From Obrimoposthia wandeli (taxonomy: Eukaryota): a stretch of DNA of 64,000 nt. Shown here in pieces: positions 14,666-38,029 of this stretch. Location of the stretch: assembly GCA_977020255.1 (NCBI GenBank), contig CDROCS010001822.1, forward strand, positions 124,001 to 188,000, read 5' to 3'. Position 1 is the stretch's first letter. Each line of letters opens with the position of its first letter. A program made the position numbers and the translations under genes. The notes beneath the pieces were generated by a model, which worked only from the letters and a program-made list of their open reading frames with translations, searched no databases and was not told where the DNA came from.

Positions 14666-14840
14666 TGTTAGGTTTAAGAATTAAGAAATTAAAATAATTT
14701 AGTCGATTAAATACTAAAATAAAAATCCTTGAAAGCAAGGTTGAAAATTAAATTAAATATTAATTTTAGATTCAAAATTGAAATTAGTGGAAGTTAGGAT
14801 AAAAATTAGGAGGACCACGAAGGTCGTGTATAGTGTAGGA

Positions 14841-14848
14841 TATATAAG
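14841..14848 (+). promoter_or_regulatory. LTR TATA box
   Basis: TATATAAG; the homologous position in the solo LTR reads ATATATATAG (43261). Confidence 0.6.
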
Positions 14849-14939
14849 GTTAGATTAATTAACCCAAAAGTGCAACAAAAAGCACATAATTAAAGGAAAA
14901 GCAAAAGGGAACAATTGAGAAAATCGAACGTCAATCAAG

Positions 14940-14989
14940 GTAAGCACTTTTTCGTGCAGTTAAATTGGAGTAACTAAATTATTTTTCAG
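14940..14989 (+). other. Predicted 50-nt mini-intron in the LTR leader
   Basis: CAAG|GTAAGC...ATTTTTCAG|C; a 54-nt equivalent occurs in the solo LTR (43818-43871). Confidence 0.6.
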
Positions 14990-15146
14990 CTGCCGCCAAA
15001 ACTCCAGTTGAAACAGCTGTCGACATTGCTGATTGACAGCCAGGAGTTGCAGAAATCGACTATAAAAGTCGTCGACCAAAAAACAAATAGACACGAAAGA
15101 AAAAATCAATATCCCAAATCTACTGAAGGGAATCGACCACATATTG

Positions 15147-15152
15147 GTAAGT
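15147..15152 (+). promoter_or_regulatory. Major 5' splice donor of the LTR leader
   Basis: TATTG|GTAAGT, a perfect consensus; the equivalent in the solo LTR is TATTG|GTAAGA (44028). Confidence 0.7.
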
Positions 15153-15200
15153 GAGATTTGGTGAAATTTGGATTAACTTATTGTAGATCACAAGTCTATT

Positions 15201-15522
15201 GCCAATATCGTTTGAAAGAAATATCGTTAAATATTGCCAATATCGTTTGAAAGAAATATCGTTAAATTTTGCCAATATCGTTTGAAAGAAATATCGCTAA
15301 ATATTGCCAATATCGTTTGAAAGAAATATCGTTAAATATTGCCAATATCGTTTGAAAGAAATATCGTTAAATTTTGCCAATATCGTTTGAAAGAAATATC
15401 GTTAAATTTTGCCAATATCGTTTGAAAGAAATATCGTTAAATGATGCCAATATCGTTTGAAAGAAATATCGTTAAATTTTGCCAATATCGTTTGAAAGAA
15501 ATATCGCTAAATATTGCCAATA
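15201..15522 (+). repeat. 35-bp tandem repeat in 5' LTR, 9 full copies plus a partial
   Basis: Unit GCCAATATCGTTTGAAAGAAATATCGTTAAAT(A/T)TT starts at 15201, 15236 ... 15481. Confidence 0.97.
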
Positions 15523-15623
15523 CATTGTTAAAAGAAGCCGATCGTCGCAATATTCCCAAACTACCTACGGATCCTGTACCGGAATTTCAAGCAGCATATA
15601 GGTAAGAACACCGACTAAAGCAT

Positions 15624-16060
15624 TCATTGCCCCTAGTTGGCAATTAGGATACATTCATTGCCCCTTGTTGGTAATTCGAAATTGTAATATATTTTAACCA
15701 TATTCATTGTCCCTAGCTGACAATTAGGATTGCTGTCTCTTTAACCAAATCATTGTCCCTAGTTGACAATTAGGATTGTCCATTTTATTCATTGTCCCCA
15801 GTTGACAATTAGGAATTGTACGAGTTTTTTCCCGTAAGATTCATTGTCTCTAGCTGACAATTCGGTTCACTCATTGTCCCTAGTTGACAATTCGGAACAA
15901 ATACTCATTGTCCCTAGTTAACAATTCGGTCCACTCATTGTCCCTAGTTGACAATTCGGAACCAACACTCATTGTCCTAGTTGACAATTCGGAGTAAGTT
16001 TTCATTGTCATCGTTGACAATTAGGTTTTTAGGAGAATCATTGTCCACAGTGGACAATTC
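15624..16060 (+). repeat. Array of 12 short palindromic units TC-ATTGTC-n6/7-GACAAT
   Basis: Units at 15626, 15657, 15706, 15752, 15791, 15843, 15873, 15907, 15937, 15971, 16004 and 16040. Confidence 0.9.
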
Positions 16061-16329
16061 GTGGTTAAATACACAACAGATAGAGTTACGGATTCAAGAA
16101 ACTTTATCCACACATAAGAAGTTGAGTCGAAGAAATTTAAGAGGGTTGCGTTATAGATTAACCAACCTAGGAAGAAGAATAACCCTAAAATCTCGATCAC
16201 CCGAACGTAAAATCGATACGTGGTTCATCCCCACTTCTTGTAGAGACTTACAGAAGTCTTAGGAATTTTACCATACTTTTTAGAGATACGTACATAAACG
16301 TATTGTTGTGTTTAGTTACGTGAATTACC

Positions 16330-16335
16330 AATAAA
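16330..16335 (+). terminator. LTR polyadenylation signal (functional copy expected at 37787-37792)
   Basis: The only AATAAA I found downstream of the TATA box in this LTR; conserved in the solo LTR (~45729). Confidence 0.6.
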
Positions 16336-16548
16336 CAATTTCCTACATTAGAACAAGTTGTTTTTGCACCCTTCAGAATAAGAGACATCGAATCAAATAC
16401 CTTCAGATAGTACAAGAGATAGGCAACCATAACACTAAGTAGGCCACGACCAACTTTAAGACCTGCTTCTAATCGAACTCACGTTGGGGCCCTCCGCATT
16501 TCAGAGGATCTGTACCAAGTTTCGTATAGAAACCCCAACATATTAAAG

Positions 16549-16566
16549 TGGTGCCCCGAGTGAGGA
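16549..16566 (+). other. Primer-binding site complementary to the 3' end of elongator tRNA-Met
   Basis: TGGTGCCCCGAGTGAGGA vs the complement of vertebrate elongator tRNA-Met 3' end (recalled) TGGTGCCCCGTGTGAGGA: one mismatch. Separated from the LTR by TATTAAAG. Confidence 0.8.
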
Positions 16567-16605
16567 TAGCTCGTCGGACACAGCGAATTCACGTGGAATA
16601 AGTTC

Positions 16606-16965
16606 AGATATTGAGAATAAGTTTCAGGTAAAAAGAATAAGTTTAGATAAGTTTCAGATAATTGAGAATAAGTTTCAGGTAAATAGAATAAGTTCAGATA
16701 AGTTTCAGATAATTGAGAATAAGTTTCAGGTAAATAGAATAAGTACAGATATTAAGAATAAGTTTCAGATATTAAGAATAAGTTTCAGATATTGAGAATA
16801 AGTTTCAGATAAATTGAGAATAAGTTTCAGATAAATTGAGAATAAGTTTCAGATAAATTGAGAATAAGTTTCAGCAGAAGAATATAGACAATTGAGAATA
16901 AGTTTCAGAAGAAGATATAAGCAAATTTAGAATAAGTTTCAGAAGAAGATATAAGTAAATTGAGA
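16606..16965 (+). repeat. Degenerate tandem repeat (~20-nt core TTGAGAATAAGTTTCAGATA) in the 5' untranslated region
   Basis: More than 12 variants of gagaataagtttcag. Confidence 0.9.
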
Positions 16966-17455
16966 TAAGAATTTGATAAGTTTTTGAGAAATCGAGTAGA
17001 TTTGTTCCTCGAAGTTAAGAATTTGATAAGTGTTGAGAAATCGGGTAGATTTGTTCCTCGAAGTTAAGAATTGATAAGTTTTGAGAAATCGGGTAGATTT
17101 GTTCCTCGAAGTTAAGAATTTGATAAGTTTTGAGAAATCGGGTAGATTTGTTCCTCGAAGTTAAGAATTTGATAAGTTTTGAGAAATCGGGTAGATTTGT
17201 TCCTCGAAGTTAAGAATTTGATAAGTGTTGAGAAATCGGGTAGATTTGTTCCTCGAAGTTAAGAATTTGATAAGTTTTGAGAAATCGGGTAGATTTGTTC
17301 CTCGAAGTTAAGAATTTGATAAGTTTTGAGAAATCGGGTAGATTTGTTCCTCAAAGTTAAGAATTTGATAAGTTTTTGAGAAATCGGGTAGATTTGTTCC
17401 TCGAAGTAAGAATTCGATAAGTTTTGAGAAGTCGAGTGGATTTGTTCCTCGAGCC
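16966..17455 (+). repeat. 49-bp tandem repeat, about 10 copies, in the 5' untranslated region
   Basis: Unit GTTAAGAATTTGATAAGTTTTGAGAAATCGGGTAGATTTGTTCCTCGAA. Confidence 0.93.
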
Positions 17456-17991
17456 AGTAAATTTGATAAAGTGAGAATCGAGTGGATTGATACTCGAAGT
17501 AATTAATTGAATAGGTTAAGTCGGGAGACTCTGTCCTCGAACTAATTAAAGAGATAAAAAATCGTAAAATAAGAATTGTGAAATAAGATAAAAATAATAA
17601 GTAAATTGATATCGTAAACGAATACATAATTGATAAGACAACGGATAATAGAAAAGGACCCGCGTATAATACTAGAAGACAAAGTCAGATTCCCAAGGAA
17701 GAGATAAATAATAATAAAGTTAACCGAATTGAACAGGTTCCCCAAACAGATAACAAAGTAACAGAAAAGACTAGAGTCGAAGAAAACGTATCAGAAAGAG
17801 ACGTAAATCAATCAGCAGTTTCAACCGATAGTTTTGATCTGACTGAGTTATTTGGTGACATAAACCCAGAAGAAATTGATAATCTTGAAGTTCAAAACCC
17901 AGAAGAAATTGAAATTGCCAATCCAGTAGTGATTGAAGAAGTTCAAGTAAATAATATTGAAGGAATAGTTGAAGACGATATAGTTGAAGAT

Positions 17992-18687
17992 ATGGCTCAC
18001 CAAGGAGCTCCACCAGATATTAATGCAGGAAATAATGTAGGTGAAATGAATGCCGAGCAGTTGGCACAAGCTTTAAATGCGACGTTGAGACCCAATTTTT
18101 CAGGATCATTGCAGATTACAAAGTTTAAAGGAGATGAGGAAAGTATTTGTGACTTCCTCGCAGAATATTCGAGTTGTGCAGATGTTCAAGGATGGAACGA
18201 TAAAGAAAAATGTGTCAGAGTACAGGCACATTTAACCGGATTAGCACTTGAAGTGTATAAACATTTGACAGAAGCAGAACGCATAGATTGGCCAACGTTG
18301 GAAAATGCTTTTATTGGAAAATTGGTATTAGGAGACTTAGCCAAAGTAAATAAGCGACTCATGAGAGAACGGAAACAGAAACATGATGAAGGCGTGAACG
18401 AATACGCGTATGTTTTGAGAACCTTGGCCGCAAGAGCGTACCCAAGAAGAATAATGAGAAATCAGGACGGTAATCCTGTAGCTCCAGAAGCACAAGCAGC
18501 GGAAAATGACCGGAACCAAAATGAAATGGCAGAGGTTTTGTTAGATATATTTAGAGGAGGATTGAAAAAGGATATTAAAGTGTTATTAGCAGTATCGGAT
18601 ACAAACGATTTTGATAACGCCGTACGAAAGGCGAGAGAGATTGAGAAAAATATAAAAATAATGCAGCATTGGCAATTTACGCAATGA
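17992..18687 (+). CDS. gag: Gag capsid portion; the frame is open from 17605 without an ATG; probably continuous with the large ORF
   Basis: ITKFKGDEESICDFLAEY...GWND...LTGLALEVY...WPTLENAF...QKHDEGVNEYAYVLRTLAARAYP...IFRGGL is a typical Ty3/gypsy capsid. Confidence 0.88.
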   Translation: MAHQGAPPDINAGNNVGEMNAEQLAQALNATLRPNFSGSLQITKFKGDEESICDFLAEYSSCADVQGWNDKEKCVRVQAHLTGLALEVYKHLTEAERIDWPTLENAFIGKLVLGDLAKVNKRLMRERKQKHDEGVNEYAYVLRTLAARAYPRRIMRNQDGNPVAPEAQAAENDRNQNEMAEVLLDIFRGGLKKDIKVLLAVSDTNDFDNAVRKAREIEKNIKIMQHWQFTQ

Positions 18688-21600
18688 CTGCAGGTGACGA
18701 CGATAAAACAAAGGTATTTGTGAATAAAACAGAACCGAGTAATTTTCAGAATCGAAATTATGGACAAAATAAGTTCGAAAAAGTAGATGAATCCAGTAAC
18801 GGAAATAGAGATAATTTCCGAAGTAGGAATCGAGATGATTCGAGAGGTAGAAATAATAGTGAGTCTTGGAACAGGAATCGAGATGATTCAAGAGGTAGAA
18901 ATAATAATGATTCGTGGAATAGAAATAGAGATGATTCCAGGAATAGATTTAATAGAGATAATTCAGGAAATCGCCAACCTTGGAGAGGAGACGATAGGAA
19001 TTATAACGCCAACAGAGGAGAGCGAAGTGACTCTCGATTTGGAAATAATACAGGAAATAGCGACGGAAGATTCAATAATCGAGGAAGCGGTTTTGAATCG
19101 AATTTCCGAAGAAATTATTTTAGAGGGCGCTATGATAATAGACAGAATAGTCGTCGAGTACAGTTCGAAGATGAACAAAATAAGATAGATATTCGAGGGA
19201 GAATAATGTGTTACACGTGTAAGCAAATGGGTCACTATTCGAGAGATTGTACGAGAAGTAAAGAGTTCGGAACTAACAGATTTGGAAATAATAATTTCGG
19301 TAATAATAATTTTGGAAATAATTATAGAGGATATAATTCACCTCCGCCATGGAATAGAGGTGGTGGATATACTCCACAGCCATGGAGACCGAATAATCAG
19401 TATACAGATAGACAACAGTCACCAGGTAGATACAATAACTATGCAGACAGACAGCAAGGAGCTGAGAGATACAATAATTACGTAGGACAGCAAGGAGCTG
19501 AGAGATATAATAATTCTGGTAGATATAATAATAATAATGTCGACAAGACAAATAGTCGTGAGAGTTCGCCGAAACCGAAAGGAAATTTCAGTTATGTAAG
19601 CGATGACAGTGATAGGAATCGCGAGACCGAACTTCGACGCGAAATAGATTTTGAAGATAGTGATAGTAAATTTGAACGAATGTTGGGAATAATTAAAGAT
19701 TCACCACATACAAAGATGGCAAATTCATCTACGTTGTCGAAACAAGAAAAAAGTCTACACTCGAGAGAAGATATGAATGATTTAATGAATAAAATACTAG
19801 AAGCGTATGAGACACCAATAGAGAAAACGTGTAACGCACAACCGATGATTGAGCATGTAGAAGCAGCGAGAAATGCTACGAGTATGGAAAATGTAAAAAA
19901 GATAATTAGTGAAGCTAAGGAGACGTTAAATCAACCGTTAGATGAAACGAGTGAAGCTCCAGAAGTTTTGGCCAAATTACAAACAATTAAAGTGCACCGA
20001 TTGGAAGAAGTGCGTGCAGAATTGGTTAAACATAGTCATGATAACTTGGATTACAAAGAAGTACCACGAGGATTATTGAAAGGTTATGGTCGTTACGTAC
20101 AGAGATCAAACCAAAAAGGAACGATGAAAATTTCACTTCGATTAATTTCCGGACAGATAATACATGAAAAACTTAACGTGTATCAAACAATGAAAACGAT
20201 TCGGAAAAAGTTAGCCGAGAAACTTGAAATTGATGGAATGAATATGTTGTTCCATTATAAAGGGAGATCACTAGATGATGAGGACGTACCAGTCGAGTGT
20301 GGATATCCGATAGGAAATGAATTAGAGGAAAAAATTGATGTCATCACTGTAGGACGTCAAGAGTTAGTAGATAATGAAGGATTAACGGAGATATTGAATT
20401 CTGCGTTAGAAATGATAAAAACGCCTATAGAAATTTTAGACAGTTCAAGCGAAAGCGGAGATAATGATGTAGCTGAAGCTTGGAACAAGACATCCACACC
20501 AGAACCGTACGTAGCTGAATTACAAGATATGAATTTAGAAAATGAGTTGACAACTCCAGTGGTCGAGGTGCCACCAGAACCAGATATAATTCAAATCAGA
20601 CAAGATGAAGTCACGGATACAGCTAACCAAGTGCGACAAAACGAAACCGTAACCCAACTAGTAGGAGAAGACGAAGTCTCCGAGATTGTAGATTTGGATT
20701 CACCAATTTGGCATGCCGCATACAGAGATAGACAAGCAGAGCAAATGATGCGACAAAATGAAGAGATTGGCCATGAAGAAGGACCAAGTCACGAGATACA
20801 GTATAATGGTGAACCGTATGATCCAGGAGAGAATCAAACTGAGTATCAGTATTTTCGAAGAGGACCTGGAAGACCTAGAAAAGGCGAAAGTATATTACGA
20901 AATGTTCTAACTGCACCACAAACTGATGAAGAGAGACATCTAAGTATTGGACAGTTAGCAGCGTCATTAGAGCAGTATAGTGCAGAGAGGAATGAAGATA
21001 TCAGAGGTGATATGAATTCGGAAACTCCAAGTAGTAAAGATATACTTACGGGAATTCTCAGGCAAGTGAAGCCGAAGTTGTTTAAAATGTACAGAGATGA
21101 AACAACCGATATAACAGACAATTTGACTAAAGCAGTTAGATCACAAATGTCTGCAGTAAAGAGAATGACTGCGAATCATGTATACCATGCATCCATAGAT
21201 AGATTCTATGACGGTGAAGTTTTAGCGAGATTATGTGGAAACCAAACTACAAATAAAAAGTTAATTACAGCGATCACATATCTATGTTTCCAATTGACGG
21301 AACGAACGAGCCAACCTCACGAAGTCAAACAAGGAATAAATGAAGCGATGTATTTGATCGAGAATGTATTACAGAGACGAATTGACGAAAATGGAGGTTG
21401 GGCAAAATTAAGTGACTACGCTAAAACCATTTTGGAAATGAATGAAGACGATGACGAACAATGTCATGAGAATCGTCAAAAGGAAAATAAACAATACCGT
21501 CCGAAAGAGAGAAACAATCAACCAAATATGTCCACAACAATGATGATGATGATGTTAGTAATGTTTATGGGAATGCAACAGGCATCAGGATTGATAGCAT

Positions 21601-33600: not shown

Positions 33601-33899
33601 CAGAAGCGAAAGAAAAAGAGCTCAATTCCAGAAACCAAAGTACAATTATTAAGAGGACAAGAGTGAGGGGAACGATCCCACTAGATCCCAAACATCATTT
33701 CCAATCCAAAATAATAATACCTGTTCCATCAGAAACAAAACACCCAAATCCAAGAATTTTTAGAAAATCGGACATAATACATGGAAATCGATCAAAACCC
33801 ATGGAAATGTCATTCGAACCGACAAACAACAAAATGAAGTATGATTATAAATCATCAGACAACGGAATAACAGCGGTCAATGCTCTAATGTTCTATTGA
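18669..33899 (+). CDS. pol: 5,076-aa Gag(NC)-accessory-Env-Pol-accessory polyprotein; the frame opens at 18645
   Basis: Uninterrupted 15.2-kb ORF with the CCHC, protease, RT (YIDD), RNase H and integrase motifs plus the cargo domains listed separately. Confidence 0.96.
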   Translation: MAIYAMTAGDDDKTKVFVNKTEPSNFQNRNYGQNKFEKVDESSNGNRDNFRSRNRDDSRGRNNSESWNRNRDDSRGRNNNDSWNRNRDDSRNRFNRDNSGNRQPWRGDDRNYNANRGERSDSRFGNNTGNSDGRFNNRGSGFESNFRRNYFRGRYDNRQNSRRVQFEDEQNKIDIRGRIMCYTCKQMGHYSRDCTRSKEFGTNRFGNNNFGNNNFGNNYRGYNSPPPWNRGGGYTPQPWRPNNQYTDRQQSPGRYNNYADRQQGAERYNNYVGQQGAERYNNSGRYNNNNVDKTNSRESSPKPKGNFSYVSDDSDRNRETELRREIDFEDSDSKFERMLGIIKDSPHTKMANSSTLSKQEKSLHSREDMNDLMNKILEAYETPIEKTCNAQPMIEHVEAARNATSMENVKKIISEAKETLNQPLDETSEAPEVLAKLQTIKVHRLEEVRAELVKHSHDNLDYKEVPRGLLKGYGRYVQRSNQKGTMKISLRLISGQIIHEKLNVYQTMKTIRKKLAEKLEIDGMNMLFHYKGRSLDDEDVPVECGYPIGNELEEKIDVITVGRQELVDNEGLTEILNSALEMIKTPIEILDSSSESGDNDVAEAWNKTSTPEPYVAELQDMNLENELTTPVVEVPPEPDIIQIRQDEVTDTANQVRQNETVTQLVGEDEVSEIVDLDSPIWHAAYRDRQAEQMMRQNEEIGHEEGPSHEIQYNGEPYDPGENQTEYQYFRRGPGRPRKGESILRNVLTAPQTDEERHLSIGQLAASLEQYSAERNEDIRGDMNSETPSSKDILTGILRQVKPKLFKMYRDETTDITDNLTKAVRSQMSAVKRMTANHVYHASIDRFYDGEVLARLCGNQTTNKKLITAITYLCFQLTERTSQPHEVKQGINEAMYLIENVLQRRIDENGGWAKLSDYAKTILEMNEDDDEQCHENRQKENKQYRPKERNNQPNMSTTMMMMMLVMFMGMQQASGLIAYDCSIPKMGQKYSLLDSEDCPESQPSKLEVKGVENYFVYQDVDKVQVEVKECSIHSSYHEFYCGHRSFMSEITPTTPYKAHKVLPRDCEDAFRTGTIEVDKNYKPDVKIGVRRYETVTRVGQRWADGSCNGGTKNVRGTKVTALVMDVTYKIELKTWTANFDKKTQLMMTYPECKMTDTSCFTGESTIVYQVNPKQCSLVFLKEISFNKIKGFLYNRDGEGFLYNKVGKGLLNETRPIPMTKTPTLLMATSIEEGLIFIKKRNKTRCGMTVSTTNYPGIVLSKEAIALAETKLKPKNMQLHTYFSNKIDFYYHKGLMQMEQLYRMMIERDCQLNKEIVRTKLALAITNPDMVAPLLPLDEGVFAKTMGEVLYTYKCNKVEVQLRTTNRCTSELAVTYNLKDLFVEPITRMILPKDTPTKEISCSNIMAPEYQMTNDLWITLPDRKPTKTPAMIRMTNLKGKMKFQAVENMENAGLYNEKDLKAAWNEIMFPVKRARVLTEMVHRALPPGARYANFDMLLSPSHFKEAAHQTLRKMWGKFLVLGQLFSGIIGIYVIIKFVQVIIAQVLSTYSLYRITGITWQLIIGCFPFLAKYLMHHHHENELRALKKEQHQTRTMMREPRNYRDDNDDDNDSPGVYAKIPGKPKIPLPDKEEVALNLYPMKELKEEKEKFKRGILMIRWPKVSYSEIPQAEEKDKKDNSRRILKSRISNENPNAPPQVAVTLNGREYLAEVDTGSAVSVLSKEILSSKELREVCPRKQTFVNVNGTDVVSEGTLKCSLNIDGRALQLNARIFTDCGSPVMIWMDVIRMFEGIIILPNNKSYKNDSSVREIKMLRGPIVEKEKYTTFRMGNSYQDKKQEALVKSILHYKNVNLGPQEMTRRKITYVNLSERDPMRFERKRRNILELYYSKEMARKMARSGLEMLNATSSYGHEIVVRCVWCRVKFREWEKNENPMRRHKRDAPNCPFLLKLKTSNVPEIQTGKVPDFDYSDGIPKGESALITGRVITNSRIEDIFEVMREVNECDEQYREVTFEDPRLKKLAKKGLFAIKKDGKDVIKCHKCKKERIIDRYTLELPNKILHHEFCEFGMLKNKIKQKEQKTECIIEYQITRKEILAQQDTPVVSFVRRLYPKEAERIRELVELKIKTTRNGYGSIFELLRDKDDSTIETKEKEYINELEYVLEDPECAVCMVNKIEVAFLPCGHVRTCRRCANEMVSCPICRRIIDRQVRNIRFHYPNIGSGLTECNNSINTIYHMGNINGAQRPAAIIRVNNLRVKALIDTGAVASIVSEDCLTEEQKRTMAEPDEFLVSVNGDPVKVTGILPCTFIIGRNTITIPVRIMKECPEPTILGMDVLSQLKGISIDLQDPRLKDSTSNRQINQIDVIIENPIKIGKRSQFLIQGHTLSEDKGPVVFEPSRDFIEKYELPVVSTVCLIENHKIPVRLMNTTNNDILLYRGMRLGKIAQMENPTVCATKLDKDTNDYEEIVIQSERLTTREKKQLLDLIHKFPKVIAKNPYDIGETPVIKHTIPLTEDKVVRRRPYRVPLQLQDEVKSQIEDMSKTGVIRPSFSPFSAPVVLVKKKDGKMRFCIDFRELNKITRKDVYPLPRIEEMLDKLGNSDYFTTLDLQSGYWQIEIEEEDKHKTAFSCGDGLYECEKMPFGLTGAPATFQRCMNFVLASCANTMVYIDDIIIFSKTFEEHLKNLEVVFKRLENAKLKVKPTKCEWAKERVTFLGHIVSKEGIRPDPAKIEKVKAHLAPKTVKEIQSFLGLANYYRRFVEHFSDIATPLRKLTRKDEKFIWGEEAQQAFEHLKERLIKEPILAFPDINRQFILMTDASNYAVGAVLGQEDDEGREHVIAYASRGLNRAERGYSVIEKECLAIVYSCRQYRHYLLGQKVFLYTDHKPLQFLYKHRDEMSRLNRWFLKLAEFDLEIRYRTGKSNGNADCLSRLTNVDEKGNIIPEEKQDETNDQKGEANLLTILLKTVKIDKEIIKEQKEDEELSLIKELLVKGDLNDEMTKKYSIKEGILYIVNNVGKIVVVIPKSLKTAVMIQYHDGTLGGHLSGRKTIARIKEKYHWDGMEDDIKQWCKQCKVCLTRKDTGTRTKVPLKPMPVPLAPMEFIAMDILGPLRESSKGNKYVIVFTDYMTRWVEAYPMQNQKAETIAQILVEEIIFRYGVPRKLLTDQGKNFTGEVIKAVSKIFGIMKLQTSPYHPQTDGLVERFNKTLCMMVQSYCSDKQEDWDKYLPSCLYAYRNSVREATGHTPFYLMYLRQNNMPMDLEWTEPTSQYLETEQYIVVMKERLQDAWTKAGLKLKFNQEGYKEQYDKKAKPHEFRVGDQVMIFYPVIEPGLLFKLHRPYKGPYKVIQTTSTNLKVINEENRNKEPMIVHANRCKLVPNKDNASRYELRSQKSKSNTNTIKLTRMVSDRNYINMMTSGSEKKPARIGMLRMKYQEEKEVIRHIAPQEILEEDEEIIVVFEKTQPTDVAKEVIVKDALTNEFLCELRVSYYDGNTLVAALYQNSNVFTTEKVLIEITLTPNIVAWQNYDSTEAGLASQEEKEPAGGHILHGTPKRLKQEYPDVIMVLRNSHGKRDIMRVHLIDADTEKIICQMDTKYFDGKTIVCCIPESHRLDTDQTEVSVRLSVIEGFHSPTHPEVTNNKIIKATAELRIDSGYRKWEAKNKKPQRINMIREQVTNSIQPKYHAEIVSSAPSVITSINDEIIILLKNRWPSSTEIRVNLINYAKTPISKLNVTYFDGLSIMGKLETIVMCYGAQFQVEILKDSVIPYPIHKYEGKINPIILTPSLISVQTDIPEYPSSESSEDSEPESNDTESTESEDNIIERFGRTMEVEFAKESRKRQNIEFVKQNIQERRIKSAEETESEEDSTKEQTSETKMNISPAIRMLRGKKLAKLSNIDEQIEKRLERLKLEESELMPPMSEIITGKLYLGNVEDATDEKKLLEQGITYVINVTMNHKSQYQTIRAMTLRVKDSMDANLLEWFVETNEILHRELRNQGKVLVHCQKGISRSATLVLAYLIKTRRMQVLEALKYLQERRSIANPNLNFLGQLANYQLLLQEQRRMDNIPEDPKEKNFLQALSLTGLFLAGVDKITQIMPKVFLCHPGDIDTAGLKFHSINRVINIVEVGNEIISLCQNTEDDTTRYIHASNREINDAQQHLTKLTQTIQAEVTEGNGVLIYQKKGTMLAPTIGVSLLVEYHGHTPEEAMVYIKQNRPNTEFKPLLVREIEKYTEKRKQQRETNEATTTVPSFQYQRLLAIGLLSCLMPITGAQEIGSNHGNSSWFNEIHNYTIQYHTPALMMLLVLLGLIDVWIIRKCLRSMRTDSKRFQFVKMKRPNGPTNKVLVYLDERIEDNIVNEAIFYPQNRILNQFRIDYEADRQRTLDRISTTFAGCKRRKRVVKEIQKDADTKGPTYIFDGDVIKTREYGSKRVIIETMEGHKTCFGKLTIQGNPVQLIIGKNGIEEMSKQRQITKRSNQKQISLKRLIIKTLCKRSVKALCTVAQGLIYGVVIGLVLQAMPTSKAELMTLSEYNLHLRNLDNTLEIIKTSHSKAVMIMCVKGCPGRMCIVPATEMITLNGHYGISVVTCEDYIFGQTKIVLLSDMSNQSAHKFKILTIKSKGIPAVRYGILELVNPILALIIGLIILILLILFCCTKIELRSKKKRHDLARRTGQMNLQKFNTIIPRPPFLDEPAPEYQPTIYEHIEERPYYMSNLTCFIEVPEFRNRTIIGIMLIIQITTTKASYEIMISKWRQDVIRAVYIEIALLKTNHVVDIHLQTSATDNIDQKLYVIRQVRIKIDQSTPDYNLILLYHERVLYLRITISKRKRIIQSIRTKSLILPRDERIWKIVDRIMITGRRRKAVWNSVRIFFRLLETDRVTVMCPNSDGGIRFEIQSQMLVPHFNTECLCNRISSNTTETSTIIMIITGEIFYITLRYQNRRFRRSGISIKPRKIIPKRPILVKKKAKVIESKRHSKKPTVIRTKTEAKEKELNSRNQSTIIKRTRVRGTIPLDPKHHFQSKIIIPVPSETKHPNPRIFRKSDIIHGNRSKPMEMSFEPTNNKMKYDYKSSDNGITAVNALMFY
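19209..19250 (+). other. CCHC zinc knuckle (nucleocapsid)
   Basis: CYTCKQMGHYSRDC within an R/N/D/G-rich region. Confidence 0.95.
20124..20354 (+). other. Ubiquitin/SUMO-like domain in polyprotein
   Basis: MKISLRLISGQIIHEKLNVYQTMKTIRKKLAEKLEIDGMNMLFHYKGRSLDDED follows the beta-grasp pattern; no C-terminal GG. Confidence 0.7.
21030..21440 (+). other. Bcl-2-like helical domain (divergent)
   Basis: BH2-like RRIDENGGWAKLSDY; the BH1-equivalent helix TTNKKLITAITYLCFQL lacks NWGR. Confidence 0.55.
21528..23384 (+). other. env: Internal signal peptide plus chuvirus-type viral envelope glycoprotein with C-terminal membrane segments
   Basis: MSTTMMMMMLVMFMGMQQASG|LIAYDC...YSLLDSEDC; Cys-rich ectodomain with N-glycosylation sequons; KIDFYYHK...CQL; GEVLYTYKC; W-GKFLVLGQLFSGIIGIYVIIKF...YSLYRITGITW. 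This matches the recalled pattern of chuvirus-like glycoproteins. Confidence 0.78.
23745..24047 (+). other. Aspartic protease copy 1 (DTG intact, ILG motif altered to MIW)
   Basis: AEVDTGSAVSVLS at 23796; PVMIWMDVI at ~24000. Confidence 0.88.
24279..24506 (+). other. BIR domain (canonical CX2C-X16-H-X6-C)
   Basis: MARSGL...VRCVWCRVKFREWEKNENPMRRHKRDAPNCPFL. Confidence 0.92.
24687..24863 (+). other. Second, degenerate BIR-like domain
   Basis: LAKKGLF...DVIKCHKCKKE...HHEFCEF. Confidence 0.6.
25158..25290 (+). other. IAP-type C3HC4 RING finger
   Basis: CAVCMVNKIEVAFLPCGHVRTCRRCANEMVSCPICRRII. Confidence 0.93.
25389..25700 (+). other. Aspartic protease copy 2 (canonical)
   Basis: KALIDTGAVASIVS at 25440; PTILGMDVL at 25644. 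Confidence 0.93.
25755..25990 (+). other. dUTPase-like remnant between protease and RT
   Basis: IPVRLMNTTNNDILLYRGMRLGKI resembles the dUTPase-fold C-terminal strands found in many animal gypsy elements. Confidence 0.45.
26151..26813 (+). other. Reverse transcriptase core
   Basis: SPFSAPVVLVKKKDG, RFCIDFRELN, LDLQSGYWQ, MPFGLTGAPATFQR, YIDD (26655). Confidence 0.98.
27087..27449 (+). other. RNase H
   Basis: TDASNYAVGAVL, YSVIEKECLAIV, TDHKPL, NADCLSR. Confidence 0.96.
27720..28823 (+). other. Integrase (HHCC, DDE core, GPY/F module)
   Basis: YHDGTLGGH...CKQCKVC; MDILGP; TDQG; DGLVERFN; GPYKV; ends RYELRS. Confidence 0.96.
28947..29942 (+). other. Three ~85-aa beta-rich repeats, Ig/IPT(TIG)-like
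   Basis: Shared pattern I..xP..I....E(V/I)I(I/V)xL.N......V.L.......I..L...Y(Y/F)DG.T(L/I): SYYDGNTLV, KYFDGKTIV, TYFDGLSIM. Confidence 0.55.
30408..30830 (+). other. Dual-specificity protein phosphatase, catalytically intact
   Basis: LYLGN, VINVT, VKDS, VLVHCQKGISRSATLVLAYL (HCX5R at 30657), NPNLNFLGQL. Confidence 0.94.
30924..31343 (+). other. Second dual-specificity-phosphatase fold lacking catalytic residues (pseudophosphatase)
   Basis: ITQIMPKVFL...INRVINI...GVLIYQKKGTMLAPT...EEAMVYIKQNRP; HCX5R is replaced by YQKKGTML. Confidence 0.75.
31413..32765 (+). other. Membrane-protein region with alternating signal-like and transmembrane segments
   Basis: Hydrophobic stretches at 31413-31463, 31539-31592, 32139-32219 and 32532-32609; a small Cys-containing ectodomain; tail PAPEYQPTIYEHI. 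Confidence 0.6.
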
Positions 33900-34153
33900 C
33901 AATCGTGTGCGTGAAAGGCAGTCAAGTATGCCCAAGAATACGACGAAAATGCGAAGGATTGCGATGCTGTGACACACCCACCATGGAGGAAGTGGAATTA
34001 GACTTACCTCCGCCTCCCATCAAGATATGATAAGTCAGAGGAGGTTGTAGATAAATTAGTGTGTGAAATATGTAGAAATATCTAGAAGCGATTGTACAAA
34101 TAGTAGAAATATATAAAACTCATGTAGAAATTAATCATCATCATGTATTTAGA

Positions 34154-34453
34154 ATGTCCGAAGAATGCCCAATATGTTTGGAAGATCTAACCGAACGAAG
34201 AACAAGACCCGAAACCTGCAACCATTTACACCACGAGGAATGTTTATCGACATAGATCAGAACTTATGGACAGTTCGGACATCCAACATACCCTTGTTGC
34301 CCTGTATGCAGAAGACAATTCGCAAGATTCATCATGTTAGAACCCAACCAAGAGGATGTATATGTACAGGTGGTATTCTGTTGGAAGAATTTCGGAGAGT
34401 GTTGGTGTTATTACTGTTTGTCAGAACGACAAAATCCGACCACTTTTGTGTAA
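34154..34453 (+). pseudogene. RING-H2 accessory gene 1 with an in-frame TAG at 34253 (W codon in paralog)
   Basis: MSEECPICLEDL...TCNHLHHEECLST*IRTY...CPVCRRQF...FCWKNFGECWCYYC is colinear with gene 2. Confidence 0.85.
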
Positions 34454-34513
34454 ACATCACACAACCACCAGTCCTCAATCGAGCCCAAATTCAACATCAA
34501 CCCTCTCACAGTA

Positions 34514-34819
34514 ATGTCTGGAGAATGTTCCATCTGCTACGAGAGCATCATGGACTTCTACACCAAGCCCAACAACTGCGACCACCTCTTCCACGTCGAA
34601 TGCCTCGAGACGTGGATCCCCATCGCCAACAGCAACAATCCCCTCGACTTCCCAACCTGCCCGATGTGTAGAGCGACCTTCTCAGTACACTACGTGTACA
34701 ACCAGGACAGCCTCCAAGCAGTGGTACCCATAGTACACTGCTGGAAAACCATCTGCGATTGCTGGTGCTCGTTCTGCGTGGAGGAGCGAAGCACAGGCCA
34801 GCCCAATTCCCAACAATAA
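34514..34819 (+). CDS. RING-H2 accessory gene 2 (101 aa, putative E3 ligase)
   Basis: CSIC...CDHLFHVECLETW...CPMC, followed by the extra Cys cluster HCWKTICDCWCSFC. Confidence 0.88.
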   Translation: MSGECSICYESIMDFYTKPNNCDHLFHVECLETWIPIANSNNPLDFPTCPMCRATFSVHYVYNQDSLQAVVPIVHCWKTICDCWCSFCVEERSTGQPNSQQ

Positions 34820-35158
34820 TCGAAGGTAACTTTCTGACTTGAACGTGACATCATGAACTACCCTGTGTATCGCATACCGCGATAAATTAGCTACCATAAT
34901 TGTAATCATAATTATATAATCTTGTGAACTGTAAATTGACCATTACCATTTTTATGTATGATGTTTAACTGAAATTGTAATTATTATACTGAAATTCTAA
35001 AAAGACAATTTTTATGCTTAGTGTGAATGTGTAAACATGCCTAAAATCGGAACAAAACTCGGTAGGATTAAATAACTAAGGATTCGTTTTGAAATAAAAT
35101 TTAAATTAACGATGAGAACGGTGAACCCCAAATTGAAAGGAGTTATTTTCTTGTGCAG

Positions 35159-35656
35159 ATGAAGTGTACCGTCTGCCTCGAGAAAATTTGGACGGCATCG
35201 GCATCCCCTGTCGGCTGCCGTCACAAATTCCACGAATCATGCCTATATACTTGGGCCCGACTTCGACCCGAAGGACACGTAAATTGTCCATTGTGCCGTA
35301 CTCCCTTCGCGGAATGGACACTGCAGTGTCGAGGGCGCCACAAGGGCACCCATTCGCTCACCAGCTGTATTGGTGGCGAGCACTGCCATTGCCCCAATTG
35401 TATCGCGCGCCGTCGCGATGCAAAACTCGCTCTCCGCGAGAAATATCGGTCAACTCGCGACCCCCGCTCATGGCAGCGTGGCCGTCAAATATGGCTCGAG
35501 AATCGCGGAGTACACGGGCGGTACACGACCATTTTTCACCCGAGCCAACATCTCACCATGCGCCAGCAGATGATACTGTACAATGGCGGCCCACCATCGT
35601 ATCCAGAACTACCACTGGAGCAGGTCTTGCTGTTCCTGAAGGACAGGAACGGTTGA
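35159..35656 (+). CDS. RING-H2 accessory gene 3 (165 aa, putative E3 ligase)
   Basis: CTVC...CRHKFHESCLYTW...CPLC, plus HCHCPNC; ATG directly follows TTTTCTTGTGCAG. Confidence 0.88.
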   Translation: MKCTVCLEKIWTASASPVGCRHKFHESCLYTWARLRPEGHVNCPLCRTPFAEWTLQCRGRHKGTHSLTSCIGGEHCHCPNCIARRRDAKLALREKYRSTRDPRSWQRGRQIWLENRGVHGRYTTIFHPSQHLTMRQQMILYNGGPPSYPELPLEQVLLFLKDRNG

Positions 35657-36478
35657 CATATCCCTGACAATCTTGTTGACAGATCCCTGACAATCACCCT
35701 TAATCTTTTCTTGTGTGTAAATTTTTAGTTGTGATAAGTAATAATGTATGGTTTGAGACTTGCTCCAAATTATACATTATGATTCCCACTAAAAACCGGG
35801 GTTTTGAAAAATTTTGTTTTGGGCATGTTTGATGAGTTGAATGATTGATTTTGTAGGGATGAACCTAAAATCAACAGCCAGAGGCTTGTATAAGTAAAAT
35901 CGATACGTTCCGGGGACGTAACTTTTTTGGAACCCCCGAGGTATGTTAGGTTTAAGAATTAAGAAATTAAAATAATTTAGTCGATTAAATACTAAAATAA
36001 AAATCCTTGAAAGCAAGGTTGAAAATTAAATTAAATATTAATTTTAGATTCAAAATTGAAATTAGTGGAAGTTAGGATAAAAATTAGGAGGACCACGAAG
36101 GTCGTGTATAGTGTAGGATATATAAGGTTAGATTAATTAACCCAAAAGTGCAACAAAAAGCACATAATTAAAGGAAAAGCAAAAGGAAACAATTGAGAAA
36201 ATCGAACGTCAATCAAGGTAAGCACTTTTTCGTGCAGTTAAATTGGAGTAACTAAATTATTTTTCAGCTGCCGCCAAAACTCCAGTTGAAACAGCTGTCG
36301 ACATTGCTGATTGACAGCCAGGAGTTGCAGAAATCGACTATAAAAGTCGTCGACCAAAAAACAAATAGACACGAAAGAAAAAATCAATATCCCAAATCTA
36401 CTGAAGGGAATCGACCACATATTGGTAAGTGAGATTTGGTGAAATTTGGATTAACTTATTGTAGATCACAAGTCTATT

Positions 36479-36975
36479 GCCAATATCGTTTGAAAGAAAT
36501 ATCGTTAAATATTGCCAATATCGTTTGAAAGAAATATCGTTAAATATTGCCAATATCGTTTGAAAGAAATATCGTTAAATATTGCCAATATCGTTTGAAA
36601 GAAATATCGTTAAATTTTGCCAATATCGTTTGAAAGAAATATCGCTAAATATTGCCAATATCGTTTGAAAGAAATATCGTTAAATTTTGCCAATATCGTT
36701 TGAAAGAAATATCGTTAAATATTGCCAATATCGTTTGAAAGAAATATCGTTAAATATTGCCAATATCGTTTGAAAGAAATATCGTTAAATTTTGCCAATA
36801 TCGTTTGAAAGAAATATCGCTAAATATTGCCAATATCGTTTGAAAGAAATATCGTTAAATTTTGCCAATATCGTTTGAAAGAAATATCGTTAAATATTGC
36901 CAATATCGTTTGAAAGAAATATCGTTAAATTTTGCCAATATCGTTTGAAAGAAATATCGCTAAATATTGCCAATA
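36479..36975 (+). repeat. 35-bp tandem repeat in 3' LTR, 14 full copies plus a partial
   Basis: Unit starts at 36479, 36514 ... 36934; partial at 36969. Confidence 0.97.
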
Positions 36976-37076
36976 CATTGTTAAAAGAAGCCGATCGTCG
37001 CAATATTCCCAAACTACCTACGGATCCTGTACCGGAATTTCAAGCAGCATATAGGTAAGAACACCGACTAAAGCAT

Positions 37077-37517
37077 TCATTGCCCCTAGTTGGCAATTAG
37101 GATACATTCATTGCCCCTTGTTGGTAATTCGAAATTGTAATATATTTTAACCATATTCATTGTCCCTAGCTGACAATTAGGATTGCTGTCTCTTTAACCA
37201 AATCATTGTCCCTAGTTGACAATTAGGATTGTCCATTTTATTCATTGTCCCCAGTTGACAATTAGGAATTGTACGAGTTTTTTCCCGTAAGATTCATTGT
37301 CCCTAGCTGACAATTCGGTTCACTCATTGTCCCTAGTTGACAATTCGGAACAAATACTCATTGTCCCTAGTTGACAATTCGGAACAAATACTCATTGTCC
37401 CTAGTTGACAATTCGGAACCAACACTCATTGTCCTAGTTGACAATTCGGAGTAAGTTTTCATTGTCATCGTTGACAATTAGGTTTTTAGGAGAATCATTG
37501 TCCACAGTGGACAATTC
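37077..37517 (+). repeat. Palindromic-unit array in 3' LTR
   Basis: Copy of 15624-16060. Confidence 0.9.
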
Positions 37518-38029
37518 GTGGTTAAATACACAACAGATAGAGTTACGGATTCAAGAAACTTTATCCACACATAAGAAGTTGAGTCGAAGAAATTTAAGAG
37601 GGTTGCGTTATAGATTAACCAACCTAGGAAGAAGAATAACCCTAAAATCTCGATCACCCGAACGTAAAATCGATACGTGGTTCATCCCCACTTCTTGTAG
37701 AGACTTACAGAAGTCTTAGGAATTTTACCATACTTTTTAGAGATACGTACATAAACGTATTGTTGTGTTTAGTTACGTGAATTACCAATAAACAATTTCC
37801 TACATTAGAACAAGTTGTTTTTGCACCCTTCAGAATAAGAGACATCGAATCAAATACCTTCAGATAGTACAAGAGATAGGCAACCATAACACTAAGTAGG
37901 CCACGACCAACTTTAAGACCTGCTTCTAATCGAACTCACGTTGGGGCCCTCCGCATTTCAGAGGATCTGTACCAAGTTTCGTATAGAAACCCCAACAATC
38001 TTATCTTCATCATAATTCAGCAACTAATC

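What the first reader, a model, noticed from the sequence alone, without database searches (positions are those of the whole stretch)
14666..37997. A 23-kb virus-like retrotransposon carrying an anti-death and signalling toolkit in one ~5,300-aa polyprotein
A normal gypsy Gag-PR-RT-RH-IN core is interleaved in frame with ubiquitin-like, Bcl-2-like, envelope, IAP (BIR/BIR-like/RING), Ig-like, phosphatase, pseudophosphatase and membrane modules, followed by three RING-H2 genes. This cargo resembles the host-control genes of large DNA viruses such as baculoviral IAPs, viral Bcl-2 proteins and poxviral VH1. Inference: the element keeps its host cell alive and damps stress or immune signalling while replicating. 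Near-identical LTRs and an open 15-kb frame point to recent activity. Giant 'Burro' gypsy elements are known from Schmidtea, and I recall an anti-apoptotic module reported in one, so part of this may already be described; the full architecture needs checking.
Basis: partly seen in the sequence, partly recalled or inferred. Interest (0 to 1): 0.95.

Follow-up and report, generated by a model that had tools for sequence, protein, structure and literature searches.

The report
Giant flatworm-type retrovirus-like element with host-control cargo
This is a real, recently inserted 23-kb retrovirus-like element of the already published 'Burro' kind, whose giant protein carries an inhibitor-of-apoptosis module and, apparently undescribed so far, a stress-kinase (MAP-kinase) phosphatase next to a dead copy of itself.

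Summary
The element is real. It has two LTRs (14666-16540, 35944-37997), TG..CA ends, a 4-bp target duplication, a tRNA-type primer site and a 5,084-codon open frame (chance: 10^-169).

Tools confirm these parts in one frame:
- Gag zinc knuckle and a weak ubiquitin-like domain
- a complete viral fusion glycoprotein (Pfam E=5e-94) with its own signal and anchor
- a second protease-like domain
- an IAP module (BIR plus a cIAP/XIAP-type RING)
- PR-RT-RNaseH-IN
- after integrase, an active-looking dual-specificity phosphatase, a catalytically dead copy, three membrane segments and an orphan tail

Three RING-H2 paralogues follow; two are intact.

Not confirmed: the Bcl-2-like and Ig-like modules. 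The '~5,300-aa polyprotein' requires crossing one frame change.

The phosphatase is a cellular MAP-kinase-phosphatase type (DUSP10/4-like) with the JNK-docking motif, not VH1-like.

The kind is already published: giant planarian Burro/GYPSM1 elements with in-frame Env, BIR, BCL2-like and Ubl domains, and the 'meddles with apoptosis and ubiquitination' idea (Jurka 2007; Grohme 2018; Arkhipova & Yushenova 2019; Chary & Hayashi 2026).

The post-integrase phosphatase block and the RING-H2 trio appear in none of the texts I could search. No database relative carries them, but a decayed relic in the same window does.

Verdict: new variant of a known kind.

The parts
14662..14665 (+). Target-site duplication, left copy (ATCT)
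   Evidence: Same 4 bases directly flank both LTR outer ends.
14666..16540 (+). 5' LTR (1,875 bp), TG..CA termini; holds a 35-bp tandem array (9.3 units) and a 30-34-bp array
16549..16566 (+). Primer-binding site (begins TGG; complement ends in CCA like a tRNA 3' end)
   Evidence: Read from the sequence. The tRNA was not identified, and there is no tRNA gene in the window.
16596..17452 (+). Leader with tandem arrays (20-22 bp x ~14; 49 bp x 9.9)
17992..33899 (+). gag-env-pol-cargo polyprotein gene. The Gag N-terminal part is in one frame, followed by a 5,084-codon open frame. One frame change (-1) separates them; it is either a single indel or sequencing error, or an unconventional programmed shift.
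   Evidence: relatives have both parts in one frame; no canonical slippery heptamer; no outstanding downstream structure.
19209..19253 (+). Gag nucleocapsid CCHC zinc knuckle
   Evidence: Pfam PF00098, E=1e-5.
20136..20303 (+). Ubiquitin-like domain (weak)
   Evidence: Pfam ubiquitin E=0.022. PDB ubiquitin variants E=0.005. A profile built with relative P0004 hits only ubiquitins, E~1e-3. The stretch is conserved in relatives.
20307..21524 (+). All-helical stretch claimed as Bcl-2-like; identity unverified
   Evidence: No Pfam or PDB hit. No conservation with relatives. AF2 pLDDT 37, helices only. Fold search non-significant.
21528..23504 (+). Envelope: internal signal-peptide-like segment, fusion-glycoprotein ectodomain (14 Cys), transmembrane anchor, short tail
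   Evidence: Pfam PF24664 Monjiviricetes_fusion, E=5e-94, covering profile positions 4-632 of 653. Signal-like segment. Anchor. About 40% identity to the Env of relatives.
23754..24044 (+). First retropepsin-like domain (DTGS motif), conserved in relatives
   Evidence: Pfam aspartyl protease E~2e-3; motif; relatives.
24330..25292 (+). IAP module: BIR (CX2CX16HX6C core), a second weak BIR-like stretch, and an IAP-type C-terminal RING
   Evidence: Pfam BIR E=7e-12 and zf-C3HC4_3 E=3e-12. PDB cIAP1 RING E=1e-14, XIAP, NAIP, DIAP1. BIR core. Absent from the 10 closest long relatives.
25404..25679 (+). Main retroviral-type protease (DTGA)
   Evidence: Pfam RVP and gag-asp_proteas, E=2e-13; motif.
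26334..27386 (+). Reverse transcriptase (YIDD) and RNase H
   Evidence: Pfam RVT_1 E=2e-38 and RT_RNaseH E=1.5e-38; motif.
27720..28844 (+). Integrase (H2C2 zinc domain, catalytic core, C-terminal part). Homology to relatives ends here.
   Evidence: Pfam PF17921 E=4.5e-18 and rve E=3e-12. About 50% identity to relatives up to about this point.
28845..30389 (+). Post-integrase stretch of unknown fold: beta-rich first half, long helices before the phosphatase. The claimed Ig-like module would lie here.
   Evidence: No Pfam, PDB or database relative. AF2 pLDDT 39. Fold search non-significant. Part of it is conserved in the decayed relic in the left flank.
30390..30869 (+). Active-looking dual-specificity phosphatase domain of MAP-kinase-phosphatase type. 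It keeps the general-acid Asp, the HCX5RS loop and an LNFL docking motif.
   Evidence: Pfam DSPc E=9e-41. PDB DUSP10 E=1.7e-23. Nearest named relatives are DUSP10 of Lingula (45%) and DUSP4 of oyster. Alignment A1; motif. Significance of the motif: PMC4802042.
31017..31424 (+). Degenerate DSP-like domain (pseudophosphatase). Asp, Cys, Arg and the docking motif are all lost.
   Evidence: Self-comparison. Pfam DSPc E=7e-5, below the cutoff. Alignment. Matches MKP catalytic domains on its own, E=2e-5.
31416..32609 (+). Region with three or four hydrophobic membrane-span candidates; the last is very hydrophobic and followed by a basic cluster
   Evidence: Kyte-Doolittle scans. No homologues.
32610..33896 (+). 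Basic, low-complexity C-terminal tail, orphan
34154..34432 (+). RING-H2 paralogue 1, interrupted by one in-frame stop
   Evidence: tblastn with paralogue 2: 38% identity over 93 codons, E=1e-20.
34514..34819 (+). RING-H2 paralogue 2 (101 aa, ATG start), intact
   Evidence: Pfam zf-RING_2 E=1e-8. RING-H2 pattern. GC3 0.77, foreign to the element.
35159..35656 (+). RING-H2 paralogue 3 (165 aa, ATG start), intact
   Evidence: Pfam zf-RING_2 E=2e-8. PDB RNF126, RNF24 and synoviolin RINGs, E>=2e-4. 35% identical to paralogue 2, E=4e-10. GC3 0.60.
35944..37997 (+). 3' LTR (2,054 bp); the 35-bp array has 14.3 units
37998..38001 (+). Target-site duplication, right copy (ATCT)

Best explanation
This is a young, nearly intact endogenous retrovirus-like element of the Ty3/gypsy group. 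It has the flatworm GAG-ENV-POL type and is Burro-like in gigantism and architecture.

Shown:
- It has the full equipment of an LTR retroelement: LTRs, primer site, Gag with zinc knuckle, protease, RT, RNase H and integrase.
- A complete viral fusion glycoprotein lies in frame between Gag and Pol, with its own internal signal-like segment and membrane anchor.
- Host-derived domains sit in two cargo slots.
  - Between Env and the protease: an IAP-type module (BIR plus RING E3 ligase).
  - After integrase: a roughly 1,650-aa extension. It carries a MAP-kinase-phosphatase catalytic domain with all catalytic residues and the JNK-docking motif, a catalytically dead duplicate, membrane spans and an orphan tail.
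- Three small RING-H2 genes of foreign codon composition follow.

Inferred:
- The polyprotein is cut by the element's protease(s), and around Env by host signal peptidase, releasing these modules in the expressing cell.
- The IAP module restrains caspases or ubiquitinates death regulators.
- The phosphatase switches off stress-activated MAP kinases of the JNK/p38 class, which trigger apoptosis in planarians.
- The dead domain acts as a substrate trap, scaffold or regulator.
- The RING-H2 proteins mark host proteins for degradation.
- Together they would keep the host cell alive and quiet while the element replicates.

The cargo differs between related elements (ankyrin repeats, helicase or nothing in the same slots), so these slots work as exchange points for captured host domains.

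The confidence given (0.75) is a blend: about 0.9 for what the element is, about 0.5 for the inferred function of the cargo.
For: Retroelement hallmarks.

Domains.

Env signal and anchor.

Relatives:
- They share the Gag N-terminus, Ubl, Env, first protease-like domain and PR-RT-RH-IN at 40-50% identity, but not the IAP module or anything after integrase.
- In the Env-PR slot, P0007 has ankyrin repeats and P0002 has nothing. P0015 lists helicase domains.
- The contig of P0004 has three extra ORFs after pol.

Phosphatase:
- Nearest relatives are metazoan DUSP10 and DUSP4.
- The Asp, Cys and Arg are kept, and LNFL sits at the FXF docking position.
- The catalytic domain alone of MKP7/MKP5 binds JNK1 through that motif and blocks UV-induced apoptosis (PMC4802042).
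- JNK triggers apoptosis in planarians (PMC4055413).

The cargo is old and maintained:
- 1,684 codons are open (chance 10^-56).
- Third-position composition equals the rest of the frame.
- A decayed colinear relic in the left flank is closer to this cargo (221 bits) than to any cellular MKP (at most 97 bits).

Published precedent for the kind and the hypothesis: PMC6431247 and PMC13524379.
Against: - There are no expression, cleavage or activity data.
- There is only one full copy, so selection on the cargo cannot be measured.
- One frame change separates the Gag N-terminus from the rest, so this copy may not make the full polyprotein.
- The phosphatase lacks the rhodanese-type kinase-binding domain of true MKPs, so its substrate is a guess.
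- The Bcl-2-like module, which would complete the 'anti-death' picture, is unverified.
- About 1,350 aa of the cargo (the stretch before the phosphatase, the membrane region and the tail) has no recognisable fold or relative.
- The organism was not identified.
Confidence: 0.75

Rival explanations
1. The cargo is a passive passenger. Host gene fragments were picked up by template switching or read-through and are carried along in a young lineage without any role. Only the Gag-Env-Pol core matters.
For: - No database relative shares the IAP module or the post-integrase block.
- Large parts of the block have no recognisable domain.
- One phosphatase domain is already dead.
- One RING paralogue has a stop.
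- The RING genes still have foreign codon composition, as expected for recent pick-ups.
Against: - 1,684 cargo codons are open in A+T-rich DNA (10^-56 by chance).
- All three catalytic residues and the docking motif are intact in the active domain.
- Cargo composition is fully adapted to the element.
- A much older, diverged relic in the same window carries the same block, so it has persisted through many replication cycles.
- Published Burro elements also keep BIR and BCL2-like domains across species.
Confidence: 0.2
2. The giant frame is an assembly artefact: two or more different repeats were joined in silico, so that the phosphatase block does not really follow integrase in one molecule.
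For: - Planarian-type genomes are repeat-rich and hard to assemble (PMC11410931).
- The exact protein is not on record elsewhere.
- Reads cannot be checked here.
Against: - Matching 4-bp target duplications flank the two LTRs, which are 99.6% identical outside the arrays.
- There is no stop or frame break at any domain junction over 15.25 kb.
- Base composition and strand skew are uniform from Gag to the tail.
- The left-flank relic has the pre-phosphatase stretch and the phosphatase in the same order.
Confidence: 0.04
3. It is a purely intracellular retrotransposon. The envelope gene and the membrane-spanning tail are relics with no role in cell-to-cell spread, and the cargo serves intracellular replication only.
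For: - Env sits inside a cytosolic polyprotein, an awkward place for a secreted glycoprotein.
- A published study found no evidence of infectious properties in smedwi-2(RNAi) planarians, in which transposons including Burro are upregulated (PMC8532177).
Against: - Env covers nearly the whole Pfam model at E=5e-94 with signal-like segment, 14 cysteines and anchor intact.
- It is conserved at about 40% identity among relatives.
- The GAG-ENV-POL order is conserved in several phyla.
Confidence: 0.25

Closest known systems
Burro-1/GYPSM1 and Burro-2 to -4 of Schmidtea mediterranea, and the Burro-like element of Dugesia (Girardia) tigrina (Jurka 2007; Grohme et al. 2018; Arkhipova & Yushenova 2019, PMC6431247)
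   Same: - Giant gypsy-like LTR element with a polyprotein of about 5,000 aa (4,873 and 5,140 aa published; 5,084 codons plus the Gag N-terminus here).
- Gag with CCHC; Ubl; env in frame between gag and pol, with hits to mononegavirus glycoproteins; BIR.
- Tandem repeats, accessory ORFs, and cargo tied to apoptosis and ubiquitination.
   Different: - This element is 23.3 kb, not over 30 kb.
- No MATH/TRAF, ankyrin, Smc or dUTPase domains were detected.
- BCL2-like is unverified.
- It has an IAP-type RING, a post-integrase MKP-type phosphatase plus pseudophosphatase, membrane spans and a RING-H2 gene trio. None of these is named in the texts I could read.
- Grohme et al. 2018 and Repbase were not available, so identity with Burro-2, -3 or -4 cannot be excluded.
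Flatworm, nematode and bryozoan GAG-ENV-POL errantiviruses with HSV gB-type (class III) envelope (Chary & Hayashi, eLife 2026, PMC13524379)
   Same: Ty3/gypsy pol, envelope placed between gag and pol, and an envelope related to glycoproteins of negative-strand RNA viruses.
   Different: That paper does not mention Burro, phosphatases or giant polyproteins. I did not show structurally that this Env is class III: the PDB sequence search was empty and no model was made.
Cellular MAP-kinase phosphatases of the JNK/p38 group (DUSP10/MKP5, DUSP16/MKP7) and DUSP4/DUSP1
   Same: Catalytic domain 40-46% identical, with the Asp, the HCX5RS loop and the FXF-type docking motif in its MKP5-like form.
   Different: There is no rhodanese-type kinase-binding domain upstream. 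The domain is embedded in a retroelement polyprotein and followed by a dead duplicate.
IAP proteins (cIAP1/2, XIAP, DIAP1; baculoviral IAPs)
   Same: BIR zinc fold signature plus an IAP-type C-terminal RING.
   Different: Only one clear BIR, with a second that is weak. It is embedded between two protease-like domains of a polyprotein. No baculoviral protein came back as a named hit; the best hits are cellular IAPs.
Poxviral VH1 and baculoviral PTP
   Same: A virus-like agent carrying a dual-specificity phosphatase.
   Different: No VH1 or other viral phosphatase was returned among the best 60 PDB matches or the named database hits. The domain is MKP-type, so the analogy is functional at most.

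Membership tests
Ty3/gypsy (Metaviridae-type) LTR retroelement | Two LTRs with TG..CA ends, short target duplication, primer-binding site after the 5' LTR | tested here: met
Ty3/gypsy (Metaviridae-type) LTR retroelement | Domain order PR-RT-RNaseH-IN, with gypsy/retrovirus-type RNase H and H2C2 integrase domains | tested here: met
   Pfam PF00077, PF00078, PF17917/PF17919, PF17921 and PF00665 in this order. Long hits are gypsy-type polyproteins.
Ty3/gypsy (Metaviridae-type) LTR retroelement | Placement inside the Ty3/gypsy clade in an RT/IN phylogeny | not tested
Burro family (planarian giant gypsy elements) | Giant polyprotein (~5,000 aa) with env in frame between gag and pol | tested here: met
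   Definition from PMC6431247.
Burro family (planarian giant gypsy elements) | Total length above 30 kb | tested here: not met
   23,332 bp.
Burro family (planarian giant gypsy elements) | BIR, Ubl/SUMO-like and BCL2-like motifs | tested here: inconclusive
   BIR met. Ubl weak. BCL2-like not detected.
Burro family (planarian giant gypsy elements) | Sequence similarity to Burro-1 to -4 / GYPSM1 consensus; host in Dugesiidae | not testable with these tools
   No Burro sequence or planarian genome was reachable. Grohme 2018 is not held. The window's organism was not identified.
GAG-ENV-POL errantiviruses with class III envelope | Envelope gene between gag and pol, with signal, ectodomain and anchor | tested here: met
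GAG-ENV-POL errantiviruses with class III envelope | Class III (gB/G-like) fold of the ectodomain | not tested
   Only the Pfam PF24664 match. The PDB sequence search was empty.
IAP family | BIR domain with CX2CX16HX6C zinc site | tested here: met
IAP family | C-terminal RING of the cIAP/XIAP type | tested here: met
   PDB cIAP1 E=1.3e-14 and XIAP E~1e-9.
MAP-kinase phosphatases (MKP subfamily of DUSPs) | DSP catalytic domain with general-acid Asp and HCX5R(S/T) loop | tested here: met
MAP-kinase phosphatases (MKP subfamily of DUSPs) | FXF-type MAPK docking motif at the start of helix alpha5 of the catalytic domain | tested here: met
   LNFL aligned with the LNF/FNF of DUSP10, DUSP4 and others. 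Motif definition from PMC4802042.
MAP-kinase phosphatases (MKP subfamily of DUSPs) | N-terminal rhodanese-type kinase-binding domain | tested here: not met
   No similarity to the rhodanese part of five MKPs. No Pfam Rhodanese hit. The domain is therefore MKP-like, not a full MKP.
Bcl-2 family | Bcl-2 fold or BH motifs recognised by profile or structure | tested here: inconclusive
   No Pfam or PDB sequence hit. The model is too poor. Bcl-2-family structures appear only at E=2-5.
RING-H2 E3 ligases | C3H2C3 zinc-ligand pattern | tested here: met
   Two intact ORFs match the pattern and Pfam zf-RING_2. A third paralogue carries one stop.

The most novel reading that the evidence does not exclude
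This would be the first LTR retroelement or endogenous retrovirus lineage known to carry a MAP-kinase phosphatase. The captured domain is a JNK/p38-type MKP catalytic domain that keeps its kinase-docking motif. It is paired with a dead duplicate and a membrane-anchored tail, on top of an IAP module and a trio of RING-H2 ligases. On this reading, a retrovirus-like agent of a regenerating animal has assembled a layered brake on stress-kinase-driven apoptosis of the kind otherwise seen only in large DNA viruses.
Probability: 0.3. Interest if true: 0.75.

Novelty: new variant of a known kind. Interest (0 to 1): 0.5.

Why it matters
If the cargo is functional, this is a compact natural example of a retrovirus-like element collecting host regulators of cell death (IAP), stress signalling (MKP-type phosphatase) and protein turnover (RING ligases, Ubl) inside one polyprotein.

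It also shows that the two slots (Env-PR and post-IN) act as exchange points, since relatives carry different cargo there.

For planarian biology it would link an abundant repeat family to JNK-dependent apoptosis, which controls regeneration and remodelling.

For annotation, it warns that BIR, DUSP and RING 'genes' in such genomes may be parts of retroelements.

The kind itself, and the idea that it manipulates apoptosis and ubiquitination, are already in the literature, so the gain is incremental.

Tried and rejected
- **Programmed -1 frameshift between the Gag N-terminus and the long frame.** No canonical slippery heptamer, and downstream folding is not outstanding (z=-1.6). Relatives are in frame. 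A single indel or read error is therefore likelier; this stays open.
- **Host MKP gene in the left flank as the source of the cargo.** Rejected. The match is full of stops, colinear without introns, and closer to the element than to cellular MKPs.
- **Rhodanese domain before the phosphatase.** Not found.
- **Structure prediction of the claimed Bcl-2-like and Ig-like stretches.** Both single-sequence models were unusable (pLDDT 37 and 39). Fold searches gave nothing significant. No alignment could be built because relatives do not share these stretches.
- **Search for sister copies of the cargo.**
  - Word-indexed protein searches.
  - Exhaustive HMMER search of the last 1,200 aa. Only DSP-domain matches came back, and weaker hits to the tail could be hidden behind about 19,000 DUSPs.
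  - DNA pattern scans of metagenome and viral contigs.
  - Exact look-ups.
  - All were negative.
- **Organism identification.** Failed.
- **Grohme et al. 2018.** Not held. The supplement of the eLife paper is not held either.
- **Minus-strand ORFs inside the element and Rfam families.** Nothing.
- **Other domains and weak hits.** dUTPase, MATH, ankyrin and Smc domains known from Burro-1 were not detected. A weak Pfam hit of the last membrane span to reovirus p10 (E=0.038), and of the pre-Ubl stretch to VPS28 (E=0.055), are treated as noise.

Full report
**Observation**

The window holds a complete LTR element at 14666-37997.
- Two direct repeats of 1,875 and 2,054 bp bound it. They differ mainly in the copy number of a 35-bp array (9.3 versus 14.3 units).
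- Outside the arrays they differ by 5 mismatches and 2 indels in 1,252 bp.
- Both LTRs start TG and end CA.
- The same four bases (ATCT) flank the element on both sides.
- A TGG-initiated primer-binding site lies 8 nt inside the 5' LTR.
- Between the LTRs one frame is open for 5,084 codons. At its base composition the chance of that is about 10^-169. No other frame or strand holds a recognisable gene, and no Rfam family is present.
- Host-type genes lie on either side: a D-Tyr-tRNA deacylase at 5412-5903 and an ANF-receptor exon at 47469-48956.

So this is an insertion in an animal chromosome, and a recent one.

**Anatomy**

In order along the long frame, Pfam and PDB sequence searches give the following.
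- A CCHC zinc knuckle.
- A weak ubiquitin-like domain.
- A roughly 400-aa helical stretch without any match.
- A viral fusion glycoprotein (PF24664, E=5e-94, nearly the whole model). It is preceded by a Met-rich signal-like hydrophobic segment and followed by a membrane anchor.
- A first retropepsin-like domain with DTGS.
- A BIR domain with the canonical zinc site, and a RING closest to cIAP1/XIAP.
- The main protease (DTGA), RT (YIDD), RNase H and integrase.
- After integrase, about 1,650 further residues:
  - about 500 aa of unknown fold;
  - a dual-specificity phosphatase domain (E=9e-41);
  - a second DSP-like domain that has lost the catalytic Asp, Cys and Arg;
  - three to four hydrophobic spans and a basic orphan tail.
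- Downstream, before the 3' LTR, three tandem RING-H2 paralogues. Two are intact with ATG starts; one has a single in-frame stop.

The Gag N-terminal part lies upstream in another frame. The ten closest relatives have it in frame with the rest. No canonical slippery site is present. I therefore count one frame change in the polyprotein gene, most simply an indel or a read error.

Breaks in the element in total: one frame change (gag part of the polyprotein gene) and one stop (one RING-H2 paralogue).

**Relatives**

The closest long proteins in 5.8 billion clusters are unnamed polyproteins from ENA and JGI assemblies.
- They share the Gag N-terminus, Ubl, Env (about 40% identity), the first protease-like domain and PR-RT-RH-IN (about 50%). 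They share neither the IAP module nor anything beyond integrase.
- In the slot between Env and protease, P0007 has ankyrin repeats and P0002 has nothing.
- P0015 lists helicase domains.
- The contig of P0004 has three extra ORFs after pol.

The two slots thus vary between lineages.

Searches for the post-integrase block found only generic DUSP-domain matches. None of the window's proteins is on record.

The window itself gives a second witness. A decayed, colinear relic on the minus strand of the left flank (outer bounds 1049-2824) matches the pre-phosphatase stretch and the phosphatase. It scores 221 bits against this element and at most 97 bits against cellular MKPs. The block therefore pre-dates this insertion and exists in a diverged lineage of the same genome.

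Third-position composition of the block equals that of Gag, Env and Pol (GC3 0.27-0.38). The RING-H2 ORFs are foreign (GC3 0.60-0.77), which suggests a later capture.

**The phosphatase**

- Its best solved relatives are DUSP10, DUSP4, DUSP1 and DUSP16.
- The nearest named proteins are DUSP10 of Lingula (45%) and DUSP4 of oyster.
- The closest of all (P0028) is a rhodanese-plus-DSP protein from a sequencing run of unknown organism.
- The alignment shows the general-acid Asp and the HCX5RS loop. It also shows LNFL at the position of the FXF-type docking motif.
- According to Liu et al. 2016 (PMC4802042), that motif lets the catalytic domain alone of MKP7 and MKP5 bind JNK1, dephosphorylate it and block UV-induced apoptosis. 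MKP5 has Leu at the first position, as here.
- No rhodanese-type kinase-binding domain precedes it.

It is thus MKP-like, not a full MKP, and not VH1-like by descent.

**What is not supported**

- **Bcl-2-like.** No Pfam or PDB hit, no conservation with relatives, an unusable model and a non-significant fold search. Published Burro elements have a BCL2-like motif in the same position, so it stays possible.
- **Ig-like.** There is only a low-confidence beta-rich prediction.

**Mechanism**

Shown: a complete retroelement machinery, an intact-looking envelope gene, and cargo with intact catalytic or zinc-binding signatures.

Inferred:
- The polyprotein is processed by the element's protease(s), and around Env by signal peptidase.
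- The IAP module restrains caspases or acts as an E3 ligase.
- The MKP-like domain turns off JNK/p38-class kinases. JNK triggers apoptosis in planarians (PMC4055413).
- The dead domain serves as trap or scaffold.
- The RING-H2 proteins target host proteins for degradation.

I rate the identity of the element at about 0.9 and this functional reading at about 0.5.

**Comparison and novelty**

- Jurka (2007), Grohme et al. (2018) and Arkhipova & Yushenova (2019, PMC6431247) described giant planarian gypsy elements (Burro/GYPSM1). Those have a polyprotein of about 5,000 aa, Gag, MATH, Ubl, BCL2-like, in-frame env, BIR, dUTPase and ankyrin domains. They also proposed that the elements meddle with apoptosis and ubiquitination.
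- Chary & Hayashi (2026, PMC13524379) described GAG-ENV-POL errantiviruses with class III envelope in flatworms.
- None of the texts I could search mentions a phosphatase in such an element.
- The primary Burro paper and Repbase were not available.

I therefore file this as a new variant of a known kind, with moderate interest.

- The organism is unidentified, there is only one full copy, and there are no reads.
- I used it in no tool and give it no weight.
- While checking the RING paralogues I saw the place of the one stop. The printed output lists open stretches from which that place can be inferred.
- My early notes give the bounds of the two open frames that bracket the frame change.

Noticed in passing
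window 1049-2824, minus strand: Decayed, colinear relic matching the element's pre-phosphatase stretch and phosphatase domain (39-48% aa identity), with several stops and at least one frame change. It is closer to the element (221 bits) than to cellular MKPs (at most 97 bits). It is evidence for an older, diverged lineage with the same cargo.
   Followed up: partly
window 43086-45943: Solo LTR of a related family. Its first ~170 bp are 74% and its last ~340 bp 93% identical to the element's LTR. It has TG..CA ends, a 4-bp target duplication (CTTG) and its own 64-bp tandem array (43944-45262).
   Followed up: partly
window 8278-9270, plus strand: RT-like stretch, 27% identical to the element's RT, with many stops. 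It is a remnant of another retroelement.
   Followed up: no
window 5412-5903 and 47469-48956, plus strand: Host-type genes flank the repeat-rich region: a D-Tyr-tRNA deacylase ORF (164 aa, Pfam E=6e-27), and a 496-aa exon with an ANF-receptor ligand-binding domain (E=7e-37) and GC3 of 0.56. Neither exact sequence is in the 15-billion-protein collection.
   Followed up: partly
window 14366-14631 and just right of 37997: The element is inserted into a host tandem array (37- and 126-bp periods, CATC/ATCT-rich). The target duplication is part of that repeat.
   Followed up: no
window 33897-35943: The accessory region after the giant frame has a different base composition (43% G+C, little A/T skew) from the rest of the element. 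Its RING-H2 ORFs have GC3 of 0.60-0.77, and overlapping alternative-frame ORFs of about 170 aa have no Pfam match.
   Followed up: partly
window 23754-24044 and 25404-25679: There are two retropepsin-like domains per polyprotein (DTGS and DTGA). The first is conserved in position in most relatives, and some relatives have a further one after integrase. Whether they pair as a heterodimer is unknown.
   Followed up: no
locus L003 (JGI 3300027940 contig), 11375-13852: A relative's contig carries three ORFs (222, 434 and 67 aa) after pol. The 434-aa one has a weak exonuclease (RNase_T) match, E=9e-4. This is another case of variable accessory genes.
   Followed up: no
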